Positions 32,345-62,081 of a stretch of DNA of 64,000 bases are shown here, piece after piece. Numbering within the stretch: the stretch's first letter is position 1; every line of letters begins with the position of its first letter. The position numbers and the translations under genes were made by a program. Below the pieces are notes generated by a model. That model searched no databases, was not told the DNA's origin, and saw only the letters and a program-made list of their open reading frames with translations. Where the stretch lies: IMG/VR virus record IMGVR_UViG_3300017917_002466, positions 1-64,000 of that record; one strand, given 5' to 3'.

Positions 32345-33349
32345 TTAAACTCCTAATAATTTTTCACTTAAAATTTTATCAATATTTTTAAAATTTTTAT
32401 AACTTATTCTAATTAAATCTATATCATTATTTATGCAATATTCATTCTTGATATTATCATTCTTTTTCGTTATTTCAAAATTTTTAATAGCTTCTTCATA
32501 TTTAATACCACCAAATTGAACTGGTCTAAAGTGATGTTCCCCATCTAACTCAATACAAGTATTTTCTTTAATCAAATAAAAATCAAAAGGTAAACAATTT
32601 TTTAAACCTCTACAATTATCAAACTTTTTTTGTTCTTCATACAATAAATTATTATCTATTATCCATTTTTTAGCTTTTAATTCAGCTAATGAATTAATAT
32701 TACATTCCGGGCAATAAGTTCCTTTTCTTAATAAATCTAAATTTCTATAAAAAATCCCATGTTTTTTACAAATAATAGGTAATTTAATTTTAGTATTCTT
32801 ATAAGTTTCTTCATTAATTAAAGAGAAATCAAAAGGTTCATTTTTATATAATTCTTTTAATTCTTTAATAACTTCTATAAAAGAATTTCTTCTAGCATTT
32901 TCTATTCTTTCTCTAGCACATTTAGGACATGAATGATTTGATTTATGATTATTGGCCATTTGATGAAATAATCCATGTTCTATTCCTTTTTTATCTTTTT
33001 TATGACAAATAATTGGAATAATACTATAATTATTTTCATAATTAAATTCATTTATTAAACTATAATCATATTTTTCGATTCCATAAATTTGTTCAAATTC
33101 TTTAATTAAATCTTTAACTTTAGTTTTAAATTCTGCTTTTAATATATCAATTTTACATTTTGGACACCTATTACCACTCATATGATTATTAATTATTTGA
33201 TAAAAAATTCCGTGTTTTTTACATATAATTGGTATTTTAGATTTACTATTAACACAGTTATCTTCGTTTAATAAAGAATAATCAAATTCATTCCCATGAA
33301 CTTTTTGAAAACTTTCAATATATTCTTTATAACTTTTAGGTTTACTCAT
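32345..33349 (-). CDS. Putative homing endonuclease: repeated Zn modules plus Vsr/EDxHD-like nuclease
   Basis: VHG..FDYS...CKKHG.F...CPKC repeats; LPFDFYL...CIELDGEHHF. Confidence 0.8.
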   Translation of the reverse strand: MSKPKSYKEYIESFQKVHGNEFDYSLLNEDNCVNSKSKIPIICKKHGIFYQIINNHMSGNRCPKCKIDILKAEFKTKVKDLIKEFEQIYGIEKYDYSLINEFNYENNYSIIPIICHKKDKKGIEHGLFHQMANNHKSNHSCPKCARERIENARRNSFIEVIKELKELYKNEPFDFSLINEETYKNTKIKLPIICKKHGIFYRNLDLLRKGTYCPECNINSLAELKAKKWIIDNNLLYEEQKKFDNCRGLKNCLPFDFYLIKENTCIELDGEHHFRPVQFGGIKYEEAIKNFEITKKNDNIKNEYCINNDIDLIRISYKNFKNIDKILSEKLLGV

Positions 33350-51387: not shown

Positions 51388-51413
51388 TATAAATACTTCT
51401 AAAGGAGAGAAGT
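51388..51413 (+). promoter_or_regulatory. Late promoter overlapping an RBS hairpin
   Basis: TATAAATA, then ACTTCT-aaaggag-AGAAGT; second TATAAATA at 51355-51362. Confidence 0.7.
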
Positions 51414-51418
51414 TAGTT

Positions 51419-52318
51419 ATGAAAAATCTTATAAAACAATTTCAAAAAGTTCATGGAAATAAGTATAATTATGATAAAGTAGTTTATAATAATTGTAGAA
51501 CTAAAATTTGTATTATTTGTCAAGAACATGGAGAATTTTGGCAACTTCCACTCAATCATAGAAATGGTCAAGGATGTCCAGATTGTGGTAAAAAAGACCA
51601 AGTTAGGCAAGTTCAAAATGAAGAATTTATTCGACGATTAGTAGATAAGTATGGAAATCAATATAATTTTGATAAAACTATTTTTAGAGGTACTAAAAAA
51701 AGAATAATTGTTACTTGTAAACAACATGGAGATTTTGAAGTTTTTCCGTTTAATTTCCTTAAAGGAAAAGGTTGTCCAAAATGTGTAAATGAAAGAGTTA
51801 GTAATGAAAGAAGGAATGATTTTGATAAAATAGTTCAAAAATTTAATAAAGTTCATAATTTTAAGTACGATTATTCAAATTCAGTCTATCAAAATTATTG
51901 TAAGAAAATTGAAATTATTTGTTCAAAACATGGTTCTTTTTGGCAATCAGTCTCAGACCATATAAAAGGAAGAGGTTGTCCAATTTGTAAAAGCTCTAAA
52001 GGAGAAATTATTGTTAGTAATATTTTGCTTAAAAAACAAATTGAATTTATTCCACAAAAAAGATTTGAAGAATGTAAATTATTTAAACCATTGGCGTTTG
52101 ATTTCTTTTTACCAAAAAATAATACTTGTATAGAATATAACGGCATTCAACATTATGAATCTTTAGATTATTTTGGTGGAAAACAAGAATTAGAAGAAAT
52201 TCAAAAAAGAGATGCTATTAAAATTAAATTTTGTAAAGACAATAATATTAAGTTAATAATAATACCATATTGGAAATTGGATGAAATTGAAAATATTTTA
52301 AAAGGATTTTTATTATGA
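51419..52318 (+). CDS. Putative homing endonuclease (Zn-module repeats plus Vsr/EDxHD-like)
   Basis: Paralogue of 32345..33349; LAFDFFL...IEYNGIQHY. Confidence 0.8.
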   Translation: MKNLIKQFQKVHGNKYNYDKVVYNNCRTKICIICQEHGEFWQLPLNHRNGQGCPDCGKKDQVRQVQNEEFIRRLVDKYGNQYNFDKTIFRGTKKRIIVTCKQHGDFEVFPFNFLKGKGCPKCVNERVSNERRNDFDKIVQKFNKVHNFKYDYSNSVYQNYCKKIEIICSKHGSFWQSVSDHIKGRGCPICKSSKGEIIVSNILLKKQIEFIPQKRFEECKLFKPLAFDFFLPKNNTCIEYNGIQHYESLDYFGGKQELEEIQKRDAIKIKFCKDNNIKLIIIPYWKLDEIENILKGFLL

Positions 52319-58395: not shown

Positions 58396-59751
58396 ATGTT
58401 TACAAGAATTTTTTATGATCCATACAAGAATCACCTATATTGTGTTGAAACAGTTAATGGAAAAAGAACAAAGATAGATTTCCACCCAAAGTTTGAGTAT
58501 TACGTTCCAGACAATACAGGCAATTCTCCATATAAAGATATTTATGGCAATCCTGTCATGCTCCAAGAAAGTGAGACAAGACAGGATATGAAAACTGTTG
58601 CCGAATCTGTAAAGACCTGTGAGACAGATATTTCAGAAGATATAAAGTTTCTTCAAAAGAGATATAGAGGTCAGAATCTTAAAGCCGATCTAAACAATTT
58701 TCAGATTTGTACAGTGGACATTGAGGTTGAATCAGAAAAAGAATTTCCCAAGGCGGACGAAGCAAAATATCCAATCAACCTTATTACCGCTCACTATTCC
58801 AAAGACAATCAGACATATACTTGGGGATTGAGGCCATACACTGGCAATGACCCGAGTGTTAAGAACTATACCTACTGCGCTGACGAACCCACCCTTATAA
58901 GAAGCTTCATTGCACATTTCCGAAAGAAGTCCGTGGATATTCTTACAGGCTGGAATATTATGGGATTTGATGTTCCATATATGGTCAACCGATGTAAGAT
59001 ACTTAAAATTGAAGAATCATTATCGCCTCTCAATATGTACAAGGAAAGAAAACACGGAGGATATCATATTGACGGTGGTGGTTATATCATTGCCGGTATT
59101 TCAATTCTTGATGGATTGGAACTTTATAAGAACTTTGTTTATGTTAAGAGAGAAAGATATTCGCTTCAGTTTATTGGAAAGCTTGAAGTTGGAGAAGGAA
59201 AGAAAGACCTTGAAGGAACTGTTAATACAGCTTGGAAGCAATGGAATGAGTTCGTTGAATATAACGTACAAGACGTTAACCTTTGTCGCAAGATAGAAGA
59301 AAAGAAAAAGCTTATTAAGCTCACCATTGAATTCTGTTATCAAGCCCTCATTCCTTTTGATAGAATCTTTTCATCAATCACTCTCGTAACTGGATATATG
59401 TTGCGAAGACTTCACGACAAAAATATTGTCTTCCCTGATAGAGTATCTACTGAAAAGAATCAAAAATTCCCCGGTGCATATGTTATGGCAAAACCCGGTT
59501 ACTATAACTGGGTTGTGTCGTTTGATGTCGCTTCTATGTACCCACACGAAATTTTAACTTATAATATTAGTCCAGAAACTTTATGTTTTAAAGAATATAC
59601 ACTAATTTATAAAGATAAAGAATATTTTTTTGATGGAAACGATGAAATTTTAGTTGAAAGTAAAGATGAATATATTAAAAAATTTGTTAAAGACTTACAA
59701 GAAAATGATGTTATTTATATAAATACTTCTAAAGAGAATACATCGTTATAA
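58396..59751 (+). CDS. gp43: Family B DNA polymerase, N-terminal part (3'-5' exonuclease and motif A)
   Basis: TVDIEV, GWNIMGFDVPY, YNVQDV, SFDVASMYP, YNISPETL. Confidence 0.93.
   Translation: MFTRIFYDPYKNHLYCVETVNGKRTKIDFHPKFEYYVPDNTGNSPYKDIYGNPVMLQESETRQDMKTVAESVKTCETDISEDIKFLQKRYRGQNLKADLNNFQICTVDIEVESEKEFPKADEAKYPINLITAHYSKDNQTYTWGLRPYTGNDPSVKNYTYCADEPTLIRSFIAHFRKKSVDILTGWNIMGFDVPYMVNRCKILKIEESLSPLNMYKERKHGGYHIDGGGYIIAGISILDGLELYKNFVYVKRERYSLQFIGKLEVGEGKKDLEGTVNTAWKQWNEFVEYNVQDVNLCRKIEEKKKLIKLTIEFCYQALIPFDRIFSSITLVTGYMLRRLHDKNIVFPDRVSTEKNQKFPGAYVMAKPGYYNWVVSFDVASMYPHEILTYNISPETLCFKEYTLIYKDKEYFFDGNDEILVESKDEYIKKFVKDLQENDVIYINTSKENTSL
59718..59734 (+). promoter_or_regulatory. Late promoter for the HEG embedded at end of polymerase N-part
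   Basis: TATAAATACTTCTAAAG, identical to 51388-51404. Confidence 0.7.
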
Positions 59752-59769
59752 CATCTTTGGGAGAAATTT

Positions 59770-60711
59770 ATGAAATGGAATAAAGAAATTTTTATTAAAG
59801 AATCTAAAAAAGTTCACGGTGATAAGTATAATTATAGCAAAGTAGAATATATTAATAGTAGAACTAAAATTCAAATTAAATGTTTAGAACATGGTTTTTT
59901 TGAACAACTTCCTTCCAATCATATTAGAGGATATGGTTGTCCTCGGTGTGCTATTAATAATAGAACTACAAAACAAAAAATTTTTATTAAAGAAGCTAAA
60001 AAAGTTCACGGTGATAAGTATGATTATAGCAAAGTAGAATATGTTAATAATCATGTTAAGGTTGCTATAATTTGTCAAAAACATGGAATTTTCTTACAAG
60101 AACCACAAAATCATTTAAGAAATCATGGTTGTCCTAATTGTATGGTTAATAATCATGTCTTAAAAAATTCTTTTAATAAAGAAATTTTTATTAAAGAAGC
60201 TAAAAAAGTTCACGGTGATAAGTATGATTATAGCAAAGTAGAGTATGTTCAAAGTACAATTAAAGTTTGTATTATTTGTTCAAAACATGGTAAATTTTGG
60301 CAAACTTATAATTCACATATTCATCAAAAAAGTGGTTGTCCAAGTTGTAAACAGTCTAAAAATGAAATTTTAATTGAAAATTGGCTTAAAAGTAAAAATA
60401 TTAAATTTATTCCTCAAATGAAGTTTAATAAATGTCGTGGTAAGAAAAGGCCATTACCATTTGACTTTTATCTTCCTGATTATAATACTTGTATTGAATA
60501 TGATGGAGAACAACATTTTTATCCGATTGATTTGAGTTTTGGACAATTAACAAAAAAAGAAATTAAAGAAAAATTTCAACAAACTAAATTAAGAGATCAA
60601 ATTAAAAATATTTTTTGTAAAAACAATAATATTGAATTAATAAGAATTTCTTATAAACAAAATACTAAAAAGGAACTTGAAAAATGGTTGAAGGAAAAAA
60701 CTTTAAATTAA
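59770..60711 (+). CDS. Putative homing endonuclease (Zn-module repeats plus Vsr/EDxHD-like) splitting gp43
   Basis: Three KKVHGDKY(N/D)YSKVEY repeats; LPFDFYL..CIEYDGEQHF. Confidence 0.85.
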   Translation: MKWNKEIFIKESKKVHGDKYNYSKVEYINSRTKIQIKCLEHGFFEQLPSNHIRGYGCPRCAINNRTTKQKIFIKEAKKVHGDKYDYSKVEYVNNHVKVAIICQKHGIFLQEPQNHLRNHGCPNCMVNNHVLKNSFNKEIFIKEAKKVHGDKYDYSKVEYVQSTIKVCIICSKHGKFWQTYNSHIHQKSGCPSCKQSKNEILIENWLKSKNIKFIPQMKFNKCRGKKRPLPFDFYLPDYNTCIEYDGEQHFYPIDLSFGQLTKKEIKEKFQQTKLRDQIKNIFCKNNNIELIRISYKQNTKKELEKWLKEKTLN

Positions 60712-62081
60712 GCAAAAATTATAGTTGTCCATTATCCAAGCAAAGAACTTGGGAAACTATTGAAGGCCCATTTGAGTGCGGCGGAATTTATTATCGCTCA
60801 GATAAAAAAGGTGTTCTTCCATCAATTGTCGGCGACATATACAATGAAAGAAAAATACTAAAGAAGAAGGGATTTATTGCCGATGCTATTGCCAAGGGTA
60901 GACCGATTGAAGGATACCCAGCCAATCTTATTGAAGCAGTACATTCGGAAGGAGAAACTGCCGAATACTACGATTCTCAACAGCAGATTCGTAAAATCCT
61001 TATCAATTCTGTATATGGAGTTCTTGGTAATCCATATTTTAACTTCTATAATATCAACAACGCAATAGCTGTAACATTGGGTGGTCAAGACCTTATTCGT
61101 TACCTATCTAATACATTGAATGATTATATGAAAAAGAATTGGCATACTCTTGGGCCAAGACTTTATCCAGAGTTCAAGGGAGAATGGAAACCTTTGACTC
61201 AAGACGTAGTAATCCTTCTTGATACAGACTCTAACTACGTTTGTTTACAAGAAATTGTCAAGAATATGGGATTGGATTTCAAGACTAATCAGGAATTTCT
61301 TGACTGGGTAAACGACCTTGATAAGAGGTTCTTTAAACCTTTCTTTGACAAGATTTTGAAAATCTATGCAGACCGATATGGTGTGCCACAAATGATTGAG
61401 TTTAAGAGAGAAAAGGTTATCACTCAGAAATTCATCCTTGCCAAGAAGAAGTATGCTGATGAAGTTATTGCTGATGAAGACAAAATATATGTTGACCATC
61501 CGAAGATTTCAACTACTGGAATTGAAGTTGTCAGAACAGATACTCCTAAATTCAGCCGAGAAAGAATTATGGGAGTTCTTCAAAAGATATTTGAAGTTCG
61601 TGGAAAAGATAGACACGTTGTAATGCAAAGACTTCGTCAAATTCACGATGAGTTTTTGAAGGCAACTCCAACTGACATTGCCAATCCAAAGGGAATCAAA
61701 GACTACCAGAAGTATGCTGAGCCAGTTGAAACCTATCTTGCTAAGAATGTAGCTTCATATCCTAAGCATTTACCAATTCACGTAAGAGCCGCAATCAACT
61801 ATAACTTTACTATTGCCAAGTATAAGCTTCCTCTTATGGAAATCAACAATGGAACCAAGATGAAGTTCATATATGTTGCACCCCAAAAGAATGAGCTTAA
61901 ACAAAATATTATTGGCTTCATTAATGAGTGGCCAAAAGAATTTGAAGCAATGTTTAAAGTAGATGTTGAAGAACAGTGGCAAAAAGTCTTCCAAGACGTT
62001 ATTCAAAGATTTTTTAATGTACTTGGATGGGGAAATATTGAAATTGAAGAAAATACTTTGTCAGACTTTATTCAGTTTTAG
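60684..62081 (+). CDS. gp43: Family B DNA polymerase, C-terminal part (motifs B, C and thumb)
   Basis: KGVLPSIV, RKILINSVYG, LLDTDS, KKKY; ATG 60684 with AAGGA 9 nt upstream. Confidence 0.9.
   Translation: MVEGKNFKLSKNYSCPLSKQRTWETIEGPFECGGIYYRSDKKGVLPSIVGDIYNERKILKKKGFIADAIAKGRPIEGYPANLIEAVHSEGETAEYYDSQQQIRKILINSVYGVLGNPYFNFYNINNAIAVTLGGQDLIRYLSNTLNDYMKKNWHTLGPRLYPEFKGEWKPLTQDVVILLDTDSNYVCLQEIVKNMGLDFKTNQEFLDWVNDLDKRFFKPFFDKILKIYADRYGVPQMIEFKREKVITQKFILAKKKYADEVIADEDKIYVDHPKISTTGIEVVRTDTPKFSRERIMGVLQKIFEVRGKDRHVVMQRLRQIHDEFLKATPTDIANPKGIKDYQKYAEPVETYLAKNVASYPKHLPIHVRAAINYNFTIAKYKLPLMEINNGTKMKFIYVAPQKNELKQNIIGFINEWPKEFEAMFKVDVEEQWQKVFQDVIQRFFNVLGWGNIEIEENTLSDFIQF

What the first reader, a model, noticed from the sequence alone, without database searches (positions are those of the whole stretch)
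58396..62081. DNA polymerase split between motifs A and B by a HEG, with no visible intein C-part or intron core
Seen: the N-part ends YNISPETL plus a 55-aa tail starting CFKEY. The C-part has its own SD and ATG inside the HEG 3' end and resumes at the G.YY..DKKGVLP region. Base composition turns AT-rich from about 59550. Known: two-subunit gp43A/B polymerases exist in some T4-like phages, and gp43 also hosts split inteins and group I introns. Inference: a heterodimeric polymerase created by HEG invasion; the Cys-initiated tail could be a relic IntN.
Basis: partly seen in the sequence, partly recalled or inferred. Interest (0 to 1): 0.6.

Follow-up and report, generated by a model that had tools for sequence, protein, structure and literature searches.

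The report
Split phage polymerase with intein-relic tails
The only DNA polymerase gene of this 254-kb T4-like phage is cut in two by a mobile endonuclease gene, and the short extra peptides at the cut are dead leftovers of a split intein that probably help the two halves dock without being spliced.

Summary
The family-B polymerase is encoded as an N-part (58396-59751) and a C-part (60684-62081), separated by a 313-aa Vsr-like/DUF723 homing endonuclease gene (59770-60711). No group I intron and no complete intein is present.

The new result concerns the 55-aa tail. It is homologous to the C-terminal, block-B ("N2") half of the N-intein of a real split intein that sits at motif C of the same polymerase in relatives. 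Profile-profile comparison gives probability 97.5%, E 6e-12 and score 61.6, against a maximum of 19 in 200 shuffles. The block-B Thr and His are replaced, and the junction Cys is not conserved in other lineages, so the tail cannot splice.

The C-part begins with an invariant head, M..GKNF[KE]L. This lines up with the first strand of the C-intein, but only weakly.

Tail, endonuclease gene and head occur together at the same site in at least five diverged lineages, interleaved with intact alleles. They stay intact where the endonuclease gene has decayed.

Most likely this is a two-chain polymerase that reassembles non-covalently, with the intein relics acting as docking pieces. It is a new variant of the known "fractured gene" kind. 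The docking role is inferred, not shown.

The parts
58396..59583 (+). Native N-terminal part of the family-B DNA polymerase: N-terminal domain, 3'-5' exonuclease and palm motif A. It ends ...DVASMYPHEILTYNISPETL.
   Evidence: Pfam PF03104 and PF00136 positions 13-89. Collinear with intact 860-865-aa relatives L004-L008, L010 and L031 up to ETL.
59584..59751 (+). 55-aa tail plus TAA stop. It is a relic of the C-terminal (block B, 'N2') lobe of a split-intein N-fragment, and is catalytically dead (DGNDE where inteins have TEDHS).
   Evidence: - hhalign of 8 tails against 6 N-inteins: probability 97.5%, E 6e-12, score 61.6. Column shuffles give mean 10.4, sd 2.3, max 19.
- hmmsearch with the tail HMM hits bona fide N-inteins at 41-42 bits.
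- In the library of 1.84 billion representatives, only polB tails and polB N-intein block-B halves match.
- The 20-row alignment is essentially gapless.
- dN/dS is 0.17-0.39.
- The AF2 model is a beta-meander with pLDDT 82.8. Its top PDB matches are inteins, first the Aes123 PolB1 intein (9hth), but all at non-significant E-values.
59718..59734 (+). T4-type late-promoter-like box TATAAATA plus shared leader (TATAAATACTTCTAAAG), lying inside the last codons of the tail.
   Evidence: The 17-mer occurs exactly twice in the 253,664-bp genome. Both copies lie just upstream of a copy of this endonuclease gene family, at 51388 and 59718. Positions 59666-59755 are 93-97% identical to L001 and 88-95% to L020, the most conserved stretch of those comparisons.
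59718..59772 (+). Predicted RNA hairpin. Its 5' arm is the late-promoter box and leader. Its 3' arm holds the endonuclease Shine-Dalgarno (GGGAG, 59759-59763) and the AUG (59770).
   Evidence: RNA fold: centroid -11.5 kcal/mol, z only -1.57. A hairpin that pairs the Shine-Dalgarno is also predicted in L022, and the paralog at 51419 has its own small hairpin around its Shine-Dalgarno. In L001 and L020 the predicted fold differs. The layout matches that described for I-TevI, segB and mobE (PMC2988022).
59770..60711 (+). Free-standing homing endonuclease gene (313 aa). It has three tandem DUF723/treble-clef zinc-finger modules and a C-terminal Vsr-like PD-(D/E)xK nuclease domain.
   Evidence: - Pfam DUF4379, DUF723 and DUF5889.
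- PHROG 559 and 9084, annotated as homing endonuclease.
- Invariant D38, E49, D51, H55 and D82 in the nuclease domain.
- Best PDB sequence match is the Vsr-like domain of AbaSI, E 0.008.
- 6-7 paralogs in the genome.
- More than 1100 phage records carry relatives.
60670..60686 (+). Shine-Dalgarno AAGGAA (60670-60675) and ATG (60684) of the C-part, inside the 3' end of the endonuclease gene.
   Evidence: Read directly from the sequence. The C-part frame is closed by TGA at 60678-60680.
60684..60710 (+). 9-aa head MVEGKNFKL of the C-part. It is not polymerase sequence and may be a relic of the first beta-strand of the C-intein ('C1').
   Evidence: - G4, K5, N6, F7 and L9 are invariant in 10 split C-parts that are only 42-82% identical overall.
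- The head is absent from intact alleles.
- It aligns in register with C-intein residues 1-11 (MKFIEVEDFEV). The score is 10.0 against shuffles of 6.4 +/- 1.7, which is not significant alone.
- Head residues 2-15 lie in the predicted interface.
60711..62081 (+). Native C-terminal part of the polymerase: fingers with motif B, palm motif C (DTDS) and thumb.
   Evidence: Pfam PF00136 positions 145-416. Collinear with intact relatives from ...NYSCPLS onward.

Best explanation
**Two chains from one mRNA**
- The phage's single replicative family-B polymerase is made as two polypeptides from one early/middle polycistronic mRNA.
- The N-part is translated into the insert and stops at TAA 59749.
- The C-part starts at its own Shine-Dalgarno and ATG, which lie in the 3' end of the endonuclease gene.

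**What the insert is**
- It is one mobile cassette made of four pieces.
- (i) The tail: the dead C-terminal (N2, block-B) lobe of a split-intein N-fragment.
- (ii) A T4-type late promoter embedded in a hairpin. The hairpin masks the endonuclease ribosome-binding site on read-through transcripts, so the endonuclease would be made only late.
- (iii) A Vsr-like/DUF723 homing endonuclease gene.
- (iv) A start signal plus the head M..GKNF[KE]L, possibly the first strand of the C-intein.

**How the polymerase reassembles**
- There is neither RNA splicing nor protein splicing.
- The halves reassemble non-covalently through the split palm (motif A strand against motif C strands).
- The relic N2 lobe and head probably act as a docking clamp. 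N2 and the C-intein are the parts that mediate the initial electrostatic 'capture' in working split inteins.

**Shown and inferred**
- Shown: the gene anatomy, the homology of the tail, conservation and selection, persistence after endonuclease decay, and the mobile distribution of the cassette.
- Inferred: absence of splicing in vivo, the docking role, late-only endonuclease expression, and homing.
For: **Anatomy and missing splicing elements**
- Gene anatomy.
- No intron core. No Hint HMM hit on the tail.

**Homology of the tail to an N-intein block-B lobe**
- hhalign probability 97.5%, E 6e-12, score 61.6, against a shuffle maximum of 19.
- HMMER hits bona fide N-inteins at 41-42 bits.
- The search of 1.84 billion representatives returns only polB tails and polB N-intein halves.
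- The alignment shows TEDHS replaced by DGNDE, NGNDI, KEDDI and similar.
- The tails-only profile ranks the Aes123 PolB1 intein second in the PDB, in the same register, although E is 0.93.

**Selection and persistence**
- Tail dN/dS is 0.17-0.39.
- Tails are recognisable at 21-38% identity in lineages whose polymerase N-parts are 44-60% identical.
- The head GKNFxL is invariant.
- In L020 the endonuclease gene has decayed to a 112-aa fragment plus frameshifted pieces, yet the N-part with tail and the C-part with head remain open.

**The polymerase must work**
- It is the sole polB in a complete genome with terminal repeats, and there is no polA.
- Predicted complex: ipSAE 0.78 in 3 of 3 runs, best of 3 controls 0.00. 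This mark was reached by 58 of 80 solved complexes and 2 of 110 mismatched pairs. The runs agree in at least 95% of contacts and partner pLDDT is 85. The interface includes tail residues 397-406, 431 and 434-440 and head residues 2-15. This pass may partly reflect memory of intact PolB folds.

**Charges**
- Charges are the reverse of the working intein. Tails are -1 to -5 and heads +1 to +2. N-intein halves are +2 to +9 and C-intein residues 1-12 are -4 to -5.

**Mobility and regulation**
- On the C-part tree, split and intact alleles interleave and need at least 4-5 gains or losses.
- The late-promoter 17-mer is shared only with another copy of the endonuclease gene. A hairpin over the ribosome-binding site is predicted.

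**Precedents**
- Tails derived from a mobile element are essential in split NrdA of phage Aeh1 (PMC3045599).
- gp43A and gp43B of phage 25 co-purify and are active (PMC2988022).
- Capture in split inteins is mapped to N2 and the C-intein (PMC11923092).
Against: - There are no RNA or protein data. No RNA run holds this sequence and the host is unknown.
- The head-to-C-intein similarity is not significant on its own (z about 2).
- Hairpin stability is only marginally better than shuffles (z -1.57).
- The complex prediction used my own alignments and a fold the model has seen in one-chain form. Tail-head contact is implied by the interface lists but is not given as explicit pairs.
- The AF2 model of the tail was built with intein rows in its alignment, so its intein-like fold matches are partly circular, and their E-values are about 1.
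- The native palm interface alone could suffice for assembly. In Aeh1 NrdA the tails were not needed for heterodimer formation (section title).
Confidence: 0.7

Rival explanations
1. The tail and head are functionless passengers. They are only read-through of the cassette's flanks, which happen to supply a stop and a start. The two halves assemble solely through the native palm, N-terminal-domain and thumb interfaces.
For: - The native interface is large: 350-360 confident contacts, mostly N-part residues 358-396 against C-part 23-51, 98-142, 174-192 and 232-259.
- The 3' third of the tail overlaps the endonuclease promoter and leader, so part of its conservation is at the DNA level.
- Stop positions differ between relatives.
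- The Aeromonas phage 25 split polymerase works without such tails.
Against: - The first ~35 residues of the tail, upstream of the promoter, are conserved as protein between lineages with 44-60% identical N-parts, with dN/dS 0.17-0.39.
- 55 stop-free codons in DNA of 20-27% GC are unlikely without selection.
- GKNFxL is invariant, whereas fewer than 40 of the 465 C-part positions are.
- Both pieces are retained after endonuclease decay.
Confidence: 0.2
2. The tail and head form an unusually small split intein that still trans-splices the halves into one chain.
For: - The tail is Hint-derived.
- In the window lineage it begins with Cys directly after the N-extein.
- Working split inteins exist in the same polymerase clade at motif C.
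Against: - The two pieces total only about 64 residues, against about 160 for the clade's own intein.
- Block A is absent and the block-B Thr and His are replaced.
- Blocks F and G and the terminal Asn are absent. The residue after the head is L, with no Cys, Ser or Thr nucleophile.
- The junction Cys is V, I or K in L025, P0050, P0051 and P0058.
- Intein HMMs are silent.
Confidence: 0.03
3. The insert is a group I, or other self-splicing, intron carrying the endonuclease gene. The mature mRNA would encode one chain.
For: Group I introns with endonuclease genes are known in gp43 (phage 25 43B). The insert is AT-rich.
Against: - No Rfam intron match at E<=10 with lax filters.
- The 5' part of the insert evolves as protein and is homologous to an intein lobe.
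- The C-part has its own Shine-Dalgarno and ATG, and they are conserved in relatives.
- After the endonuclease stop there is no room for a 3' intron core.
Confidence: 0.02
4. The split gene is a decaying pseudogene and replication relies on another polymerase.
For: The gene is interrupted, and relatives show up to three interruptions.
Against: - The complete 253,664-bp genome has no other polB and no polA.
- All Exo and Pol motifs are intact.
- The core is under strong purifying selection, dN/dS 0.065-0.098 where dS could be estimated.
Confidence: 0.02

Closest known systems
'Fractured genes' of Dassa et al. 2009 (NAR 37:2560, PMC2677866). These are phage DNA-metabolism genes broken in two by a split intein, with a free-standing endonuclease gene (GIY-YIG or Vsr-like) between the halves. 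The paper also describes one intein-less SbcD-like case.
   Same: - Two adjacent same-strand half-genes with a free-standing Vsr-like endonuclease gene between them.
[quoted passage not shown]
- The SbcD-like locus also has unexplained extra peptides: a 25-aa tail and a 9-aa head.
   Different: - The intein here is neither complete nor absent. Only its endonuclease-proximal pieces remain: the N2 lobe and perhaps the first C-intein strand.
- The catalytic residues are lost and the charges are reversed.
- The host site, after NISPETL of polB, has no Cys, Ser or Thr at +1.
[quoted passage not shown] 2006 and 2010, as reviewed in PMC2988022)
   Same: A T4-like phage polB in two cistrons, with a free-standing endonuclease gene between them in phage 25. 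The subunits co-purify and are active.
   Different: - The split lies at the finger tip, about 75 residues further downstream.
- The endonuclease is a seg-type, described as GIY-YIG by Dassa et al..
- There is no intein-like tail (tail HMM score below 0).
- Phage 25 has an additional group I intron in 43B.
Aes123 PolB1 cysteine-less split intein of T4-like Aeromonas phages (PDB 9hth; PMC11923092), and its homologues at motif C in this clade (P0021, P0009 and others)
   Same: - The tail aligns end-to-end with the block-B/N2 lobe of these N-inteins.
- 9hth is the top structural match, though not significant.
- The host protein is the same.
- The split point is where endonuclease genes sit.
   Different: - N1 (block A) and blocks F and G are missing, and TxxH is lost, so no splicing is possible.
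- The insertion site differs: after motif A rather than within motif C.
- The charge polarity is opposite.
Split NrdA-a/NrdA-b of phage Aeh1 with mobE (Crona et al. 2011, PMC3045599)
   Same: An essential gene is fragmented by an endonuclease-gene insertion. The C- and N-terminal tails that arose with the insertion are needed for enzyme function without any splicing.
   Different: - The enzyme and the endonuclease family (HNH) differ.
- The origin of those tails is unknown.
- Here the tail has a traceable intein ancestry and recurs in several lineages as part of the cassette.
EDxHD / Vsr-like homing endonucleases (I-Bth0305I, Taylor et al. 2011, PMC3239194)
   Same: A C-terminal Vsr-like nuclease domain with conserved E, D, H and D, found in phage genes as a free-standing gene or associated with an intron or intein.
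   Different: The N-terminal DNA-binding region here is three DUF723/treble-clef modules rather than NUMOD/HTH motifs. There is no direct sequence match to the I-Bth0305I structure.

Membership tests
Fractured gene with split intein (Dassa 2009) | Two halves of one enzyme gene, adjacent on the same strand, with a free-standing endonuclease gene between them | tested here: met
   ORFs at 58396-59751, 59770-60711 and 60684-62081. Pfam domains. Intact relatives define the break.
Fractured gene with split intein (Dassa 2009) | Complete N-intein and C-intein halves (blocks A and B; blocks F and G) at the broken ends | tested here: not met
   Only a 55-aa relic of the block-B lobe and a 9-aa head are present. 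Intein HMMs are silent. See the alignment.
Hint/intein superfamily (homology of the tail) | Significant profile similarity to an intein splicing domain | tested here: met
   - hhalign probability 97.5%, E 6e-12, with shuffles reaching at most 19 against 61.6.
- HMMER 41-42 bits.
- Library search.
Functional (splicing) split intein | Position-1 nucleophile within block A, conserved | tested here: not met
   Cys appears only in the window's sub-clade and is V, I or K elsewhere. The N1 lobe is absent.
Functional (splicing) split intein | Block B Thr-x-x-His | tested here: not met
   DGNDE, TGNDE, NGNDI and KEDDI stand where inteins have TEDHS. Only P0058 keeps D-H.
Functional (splicing) split intein | Blocks F and G, terminal Asn and a +1 Cys/Ser/Thr | tested here: not met
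   The head ends ...GKNF[KE] and native L follows. Intact alleles have V or K at that place.
Group I intron with endonuclease ORF | Conserved intron core (P3-P9) detectable by covariance models | tested here: not met
   Rfam 15 at E<=10 over 59300-61000 gives only chance snoRNA and miRNA matches.
gp43A/gp43B split polymerase of Aeromonas phages 25 and 44RR | Same split site in the fingers domain | tested here: not met
   Phage 25 43A runs about 75 residues past NISPEM, to ...ASRGIKTDH, and 43B starts MELELF....
gp43A/gp43B split polymerase of Aeromonas phages 25 and 44RR | The two chains form an active complex | not testable with these tools
   Only a prediction is available: ipSAE 0.78 against 0.00 for the best of 3 controls.
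EDxHD / Vsr-like homing endonuclease | C-terminal Vsr-like nuclease domain with conserved E, D, H and D | tested here: inconclusive
   D38, E49, D51, H55 and D82 are invariant. The best PDB match is the Vsr-like domain of AbaSI at E 0.008. I-Bth0305I itself was not matched.
EDxHD / Vsr-like homing endonuclease | Cleaves the endonuclease-free allele near the insertion site (homing) | not testable with these tools
   Support is only indirect. Split and intact alleles interleave on the tree, needing at least 4-5 changes.
T-even type endonuclease regulation (late promoter inside a hairpin that sequesters the ribosome-binding site) | TATAAATA box in the 5' arm of a hairpin that pairs with the endonuclease Shine-Dalgarno and AUG | tested here: inconclusive
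   The box lies at 59718-59725, and the 17-mer is shared only with the paralog's upstream region. A hairpin is predicted, but its z-score is -1.57. A comparable Shine-Dalgarno-pairing hairpin is predicted in L022 and a smaller one at the paralog.

The most novel reading that the evidence does not exclude
The endonuclease gene travels with its own 'staple'. The staple is a charge-reversed, non-splicing remnant of a split intein's capture module (the N2 lobe plus the first C-intein strand). It re-joins the two halves of whatever essential protein the cassette breaks. This would let the element colonise sites that lack the Cys, Ser or Thr a true intein needs. It would also keep the staple orthogonal to a working split intein in the same polymerase, as in L059. 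If so, it would be a natural intermediate between protein splicing and simple heterodimeric enzymes.
Probability: 0.4. Interest if true: 0.78.

Novelty: new variant of a known kind. Interest (0 to 1): 0.62.

Why it matters
How essential genes survive being cut by homing endonuclease genes is an open question. [quoted passage not shown]

This locus suggests one concrete answer. A split intein has been stripped down to the lobe that normally captures its partner. It is retained under selection and moves together with the endonuclease gene.

If confirmed, three things would follow:
- It would document an evolutionary route from intein-mediated splicing to non-covalent subunits.
- It would explain the unexplained 'extra' tails seen at other fractured genes.
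- It would offer small, natural, charge-orthogonal docking peptides for protein engineering.

It also shows that gene callers and polymerase-based phage phylogenies must expect polB in two to four pieces in this clade.

Tried and rejected
**Splicing elements**
- Group I intron: Rfam at E<=10 gave nothing relevant.
- Direct Hint detection was negative. I tried a Pfam scan of the tail, and TIGR01445 and PF14890 over the whole genome in six frames. PF14890 found only the RNR intein at about 74.5 kb.

**Origin of the tail**
- PDB sequence search with the tail alone gave only chance hits.
- The genome has no paralog of the tail.
- The tail is not native cyanophage-type polymerase sequence. The tblastn extension to residue 441 proved to be alignment drift onto the GGIYYR...GVLP region.
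- The tail HMM does not match the long native insertions of distant PolBs L049-L056.

**Head**
- Head against C-intein by hhalign: the register is right, but the score of 10.0 against shuffles of 6.4 +/- 1.7 (max 12.8) is not significant.

**Expression and assembly**
- No RNA run holds the sequence.
- Laid Logan contigs only confirm contiguity at both junctions. Unitigs break in the endonuclease gene's internal repeats.

**Comparisons**
- Phage 25 gp43A/B has a different site and no tail.
- phmmer of the endonuclease against the PDB found nothing significant.
- Recent horizontal spread of the cassette was not supported. The endonuclease gene is about as diverged as the polymerase. Only 59666-59755 is unusually conserved, which I attribute to the promoter and leader.

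The halves were always handled separately by reference.
- Read laying was given 3,686 letters.

Full report
**1. What is there**

The window is the first 64 kb of a complete 253,664-bp virus record with direct terminal repeats, from a pond metagenome. Its gene order is T4-like: polB, uvsX, then the gp41 helicase.

Three same-strand ORFs lie at the coordinates given:
- A 451-aa N-part of a family-B polymerase, 58396-59751.
- A 313-aa endonuclease gene, 59770-60711.
- A 465-aa C-part, 60684-62081.

Pfam places the exonuclease domain and the first 89 positions of the polymerase domain in the N-part, and positions 145-416 in the C-part. Motif A (DVASMYP) is in the N-part. Motif B (KILINSVYG) and motif C (DTDS) are in the C-part.

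Intact relatives of 860-865 aa (L004-L008, L010, L031) read ...NISPETL-VLNPENPE(D/E)Y(Y/F)(R/K)(C/T)PLS...GGIYYRKDKKG.... The window differs from them in two places:
- After ETL (59583) the N-part continues with 55 foreign residues, CFKEY...ENTSL, and then TAA.
- The C-part starts with nine foreign residues, MVEGKNFKL, before native sequence resumes (LSKNYSCPLS...).

The C-part's ATG (60684) and its AAGGAA Shine-Dalgarno (60670-60675) lie inside the last 42 nt of the endonuclease gene. A TGA just upstream closes the C-part frame. GC drops to 0.20-0.27 over the insert.

The arrangement recurs in independent contigs. Logan contigs of the probable source run bridge both junctions without a single difference.

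**2. No RNA splicing and no complete intein**

Rfam 15 at E<=10 over 59300-61000 gives only chance matches.

The intein models PF14890 and TIGR01445 and the Pfam scan do not hit the tail. PF14890 does find a real intein elsewhere in the genome, in the ribonucleotide reductase gene, so the search works on this genome.

**3. What the tail is**

A word search restricted to the tail found it only in N-parts of this polymerase clade. Wider searches with each half added more split alleles: P0050, P0051, P0052 (= L025) and P0058. Their polymerase N-parts are only 44-60% identical to the window's, but all end in a recognisably related tail of 46-49 aa.

The same searches found relatives carrying a bona fide cysteine-less intein at motif C (DTD|S...VHN|S). 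It is split in P0021, P0028, P0032, P0042 and P0043 (N-intein) and in P0009, P0013, P0014, P0016 and P0017 (C-intein). It is contiguous in P0025.

The tail is homologous to the C-terminal half of that N-intein:
- A profile of eight tails aligns end-to-end with the last 51 residues of the 119-aa N-intein: hhalign probability 97.5%, E 6e-12, score 61.6. Two hundred column shuffles give 10.4 +/- 2.3 with a maximum of 19.0, and the reversed profile gives 10.5.
- Plain HMMER with the tail profile hits these N-inteins at 41-42 bits.
- A filter-free search of 1.84 billion representative proteins returns, besides three spurious or repetitive proteins (P0162, P0166, P0170), only polB tails and polB N-intein block-B halves.
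- The 20-row alignment is essentially gapless. Where the inteins have the block-B motif T-E-D-H-S, the tails have DGNDE, TGNDE, NGNDI, KEDDI or PSDHR.
- The tails-only profile ranks the solved Aes123 PolB1 split intein (9hth) second in the PDB, in the same register (E 0.93).
- An AF2 model of the tail (pLDDT 82.8, five strands) has that intein as its best structural match, and seven of the top nine matches are inteins. E-values are about 1, and the alignment used for the model contained intein rows, so this is consistency only.

But the relic is the N2 (block-B) lobe next to the split point, not the Cys1/block-A end. The junction Cys is V, I or K in the other lineages.

**4. The head**

All ten split C-parts examined begin with M-x(1-7)-G-K-N-F-[KE]-L. 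G, K, N, F and L are invariant although the proteins are only 42-82% identical. Intact alleles lack the head.

In P0010 the native sequence resumes directly after GKNFE, in step with its intact sister L010 (ETL|KLNDNRYGKTPFS against head|LNLINDNRCGKTPFS). In that lineage the cassette is therefore a clean insertion after ETL.

The head aligns in register with the first eleven residues of the C-intein (MKFIEVEDFEV, MNFIEVENFEV). At this length the score is not significant (10.0 against 6.4 +/- 1.7). I treat a C1-strand origin as plausible, not shown.

**5. Evidence that the pieces matter**

- The tail evolves under purifying selection, with dN/dS 0.17-0.39. The polymerase core gives 0.065-0.098, with synonymous sites near saturation.
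- Only the last third of the tail is also constrained as DNA (see section 6).
- In L020 the endonuclease gene has decayed to a 112-aa fragment plus frameshifted remains. The N-part with its tail and the C-part with its head are still intact.
- The genome has no other polB and no polA, so the split enzyme must work.
- A complex prediction of the two chains gave ipSAE 0.78 in all three runs, against 0.00 for the best of three controls. That mark was reached by 58 of 80 solved complexes and 2 of 110 mismatched pairs. The runs agree in at least 95% of contacts and partner pLDDT is 85.
- The predicted interface is mainly the split palm (N-part 358-396 against C-part 174-192 and 232-259). It also includes tail residues 397-406, 431 and 434-440 (the LQENDVI strand) and head residues 2-15.
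- This supports binding but does not show it. It may partly reflect the model's knowledge of one-chain PolB folds, and my own alignments were used.

**6. Regulation of the endonuclease gene**

The last codons of the tail contain TATAAATA (59718-59725), the T4-type late-promoter box. The 17-mer TATAAATACTTCTAAAG occurs exactly twice in the genome. Both copies lie just upstream of a copy of this endonuclease gene family, at 51388 and 59718. This stretch is also the best-conserved DNA of the locus, 88-97% identical to relatives.

The RNA is predicted to fold so that the box and leader (59718-59735) pair with the endonuclease Shine-Dalgarno GGGAG and its AUG (59754-59772). The z-score is only -1.57.

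This is the layout described for I-TevI, segB and mobE. Read-through early transcripts mask the ribosome-binding site, while late transcripts start inside the 5' arm and free it (PMC2988022). It would let the polymerase halves be made early from one mRNA while the endonuclease stays off. This step is inferred.

**7. The cassette is mobile as a unit**

The endonuclease has three DUF723/treble-clef modules and a Vsr-like nuclease domain. There are 6-7 copies in this genome and relatives in more than 1100 phage records.

The same endonuclease family sits at the same polB site in every split lineage whose contig reaches that far: L001, L025, L026, L028 and L059.

On a maximum-likelihood tree of the C-part, built with heads removed, split and intact alleles interleave. 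P0010 is sister to intact L010 and P0012 is sister to intact L032, both at 100/99 support. At least 4-5 gains or losses are needed.

Because the tails and heads of these lineages are homologous to each other, they did not arise independently. They travel, or are lost, together with the endonuclease gene.

The native residue after the insertion point is V, K or L, never Cys, Ser or Thr. A working intein could hardly have lived at this exact site. I therefore favour a cassette that carried only the endonuclease-proximal intein pieces into a new site, over in-place decay of a full intein. I cannot decide between the two.

**8. How it most likely works**

Working split inteins associate by electrostatic 'capture' between the disordered N2 lobe and the C-intein, before the fold collapses (PMC11923092, citing Shah et al. 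2013).

The N2 lobe is exactly what is retained here. The first C-intein strand may be retained as well.

The charges are reversed relative to the clade's working intein:

| Piece | Net charge |
|---|---|
| Relic tails | -1 to -5 |
| Relic heads | +1 to +2 |
| Working N-intein halves | +2 to +9 |
| Working C-intein, residues 1-12 | -4 to -5 |

L059 carries both the relic fracture and the working split intein in one polymerase, so the reversal could prevent mispairing. This reading is an inference.

The closest functional precedent is split NrdA of phage Aeh1. There, tails that arose with the mobE insertion are essential without any splicing (PMC3045599).

**9. Comparison with what is known**

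- The locus is a 'fractured gene' in the sense of Dassa et al. 2009, but with a reduced, dead intein rather than a complete one or none.
- It resembles the gp43A/B polymerase of Aeromonas phages 25 and 44RR in principle. It differs in split site (their finger tip, about 75 residues downstream), in endonuclease family, and in having tails.
- I found no paper describing intein remnants kept as non-covalent docking pieces. The library is incomplete, so this is weak evidence of novelty.

**10. Verdict**

The split itself belongs to a known kind. The intein-relic tail and head, moving with the endonuclease gene, are a new variant.

The main uncertainty is functional. No transcript or protein data exist, and the docking role rests on conservation, a structure prediction and analogy.

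Noticed in passing
L001 3358-5077; L022 435-2915: Some relatives carry a second fracture of the same polymerase directly after the Exo I motif (..DIEVE). An HNH endonuclease gene of 299 aa sits in the gap in L022. In L001 the gap is only 185 nt. This fracture has its own conserved tail (GYTGF..NHKIKIRKK) and head (MNEE.ITISEFETKNDK...). The polymerase is then made in three pieces.
   Followed up: partly
L059 6001-7184; L061 201-3512; L062 2-3122; proteins P0021, P0009, P0025: Relatives hold a bona fide cysteine-less intein at motif C (DTD|S...VHN|S). It is split around a different endonuclease gene (L059, L062), split with the endonuclease gene lost (L061), or contiguous (P0025). L059 combines it with the relic fracture. 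TATAAATAC also sits at the 3' end of that N-intein gene.
   Followed up: partly
window 51419-52318 (+) and 32345-33349 (-): Two further copies of the same endonuclease family lie in the window, both free-standing. One lies between a gp46-like/sigma-like gene pair and a gp47-like gene, preceded by two TATAAATA boxes. The other lies beside the T4-type portal gene. The genome has 6-7 copies in all.
   Followed up: partly
window 59749-59769; L001, L020, L022, L025: The N-part and the endonuclease gene are in the same reading frame, separated by one TAA and 18 nt in the window and by two stops in L001 and L025. In L059 the frames differ. This may be a vestige of a once continuous intein-endonuclease ORF, or chance.
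   Followed up: no
G000:C1:72954-76190 (outside the window): The ribonucleotide reductase gene of the same phage carries a LAGLIDADG-type intein (PF14890 and PF14528 inside PF02867).
   Followed up: partly
proteins P0082-P0092, P0121, P0128, P0141; L063 6461-7957: A large set of PolB N-parts of about 487-493 aa, in clusters of up to 82 member sequences and cyanophage/pelagiphage-like, all end at the finger tip (...EMKKRGL.). This is the split site of Aeromonas phage 25 gp43A, so split polymerases of that second type seem widespread.
   Followed up: no
proteins P0171, P0076, P0077, P0083, P0131, P0137: Other PolB N-fragments of 528-728 aa, broken at other sites, end in similar block-B-less tails (...ITIMRNN.IMKIKA.EFN..TDLL). 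This suggests that intein-lobe relics mark several fracture points.
   Followed up: no
window 59770-60340: The endonuclease gene has three tandem modules of about 64 aa (KEAKKVHGDKYDYSKVEY...GCP.C). They are similar enough at the DNA level to break the Logan unitigs at 59978-60211.
   Followed up: no
window 59492-59514: A terminator-like hairpin followed by a T-run lies inside the N-part coding region, just before motif A. One such site is about what shuffles give (mean 1.6), so it is probably chance.
   Followed up: no
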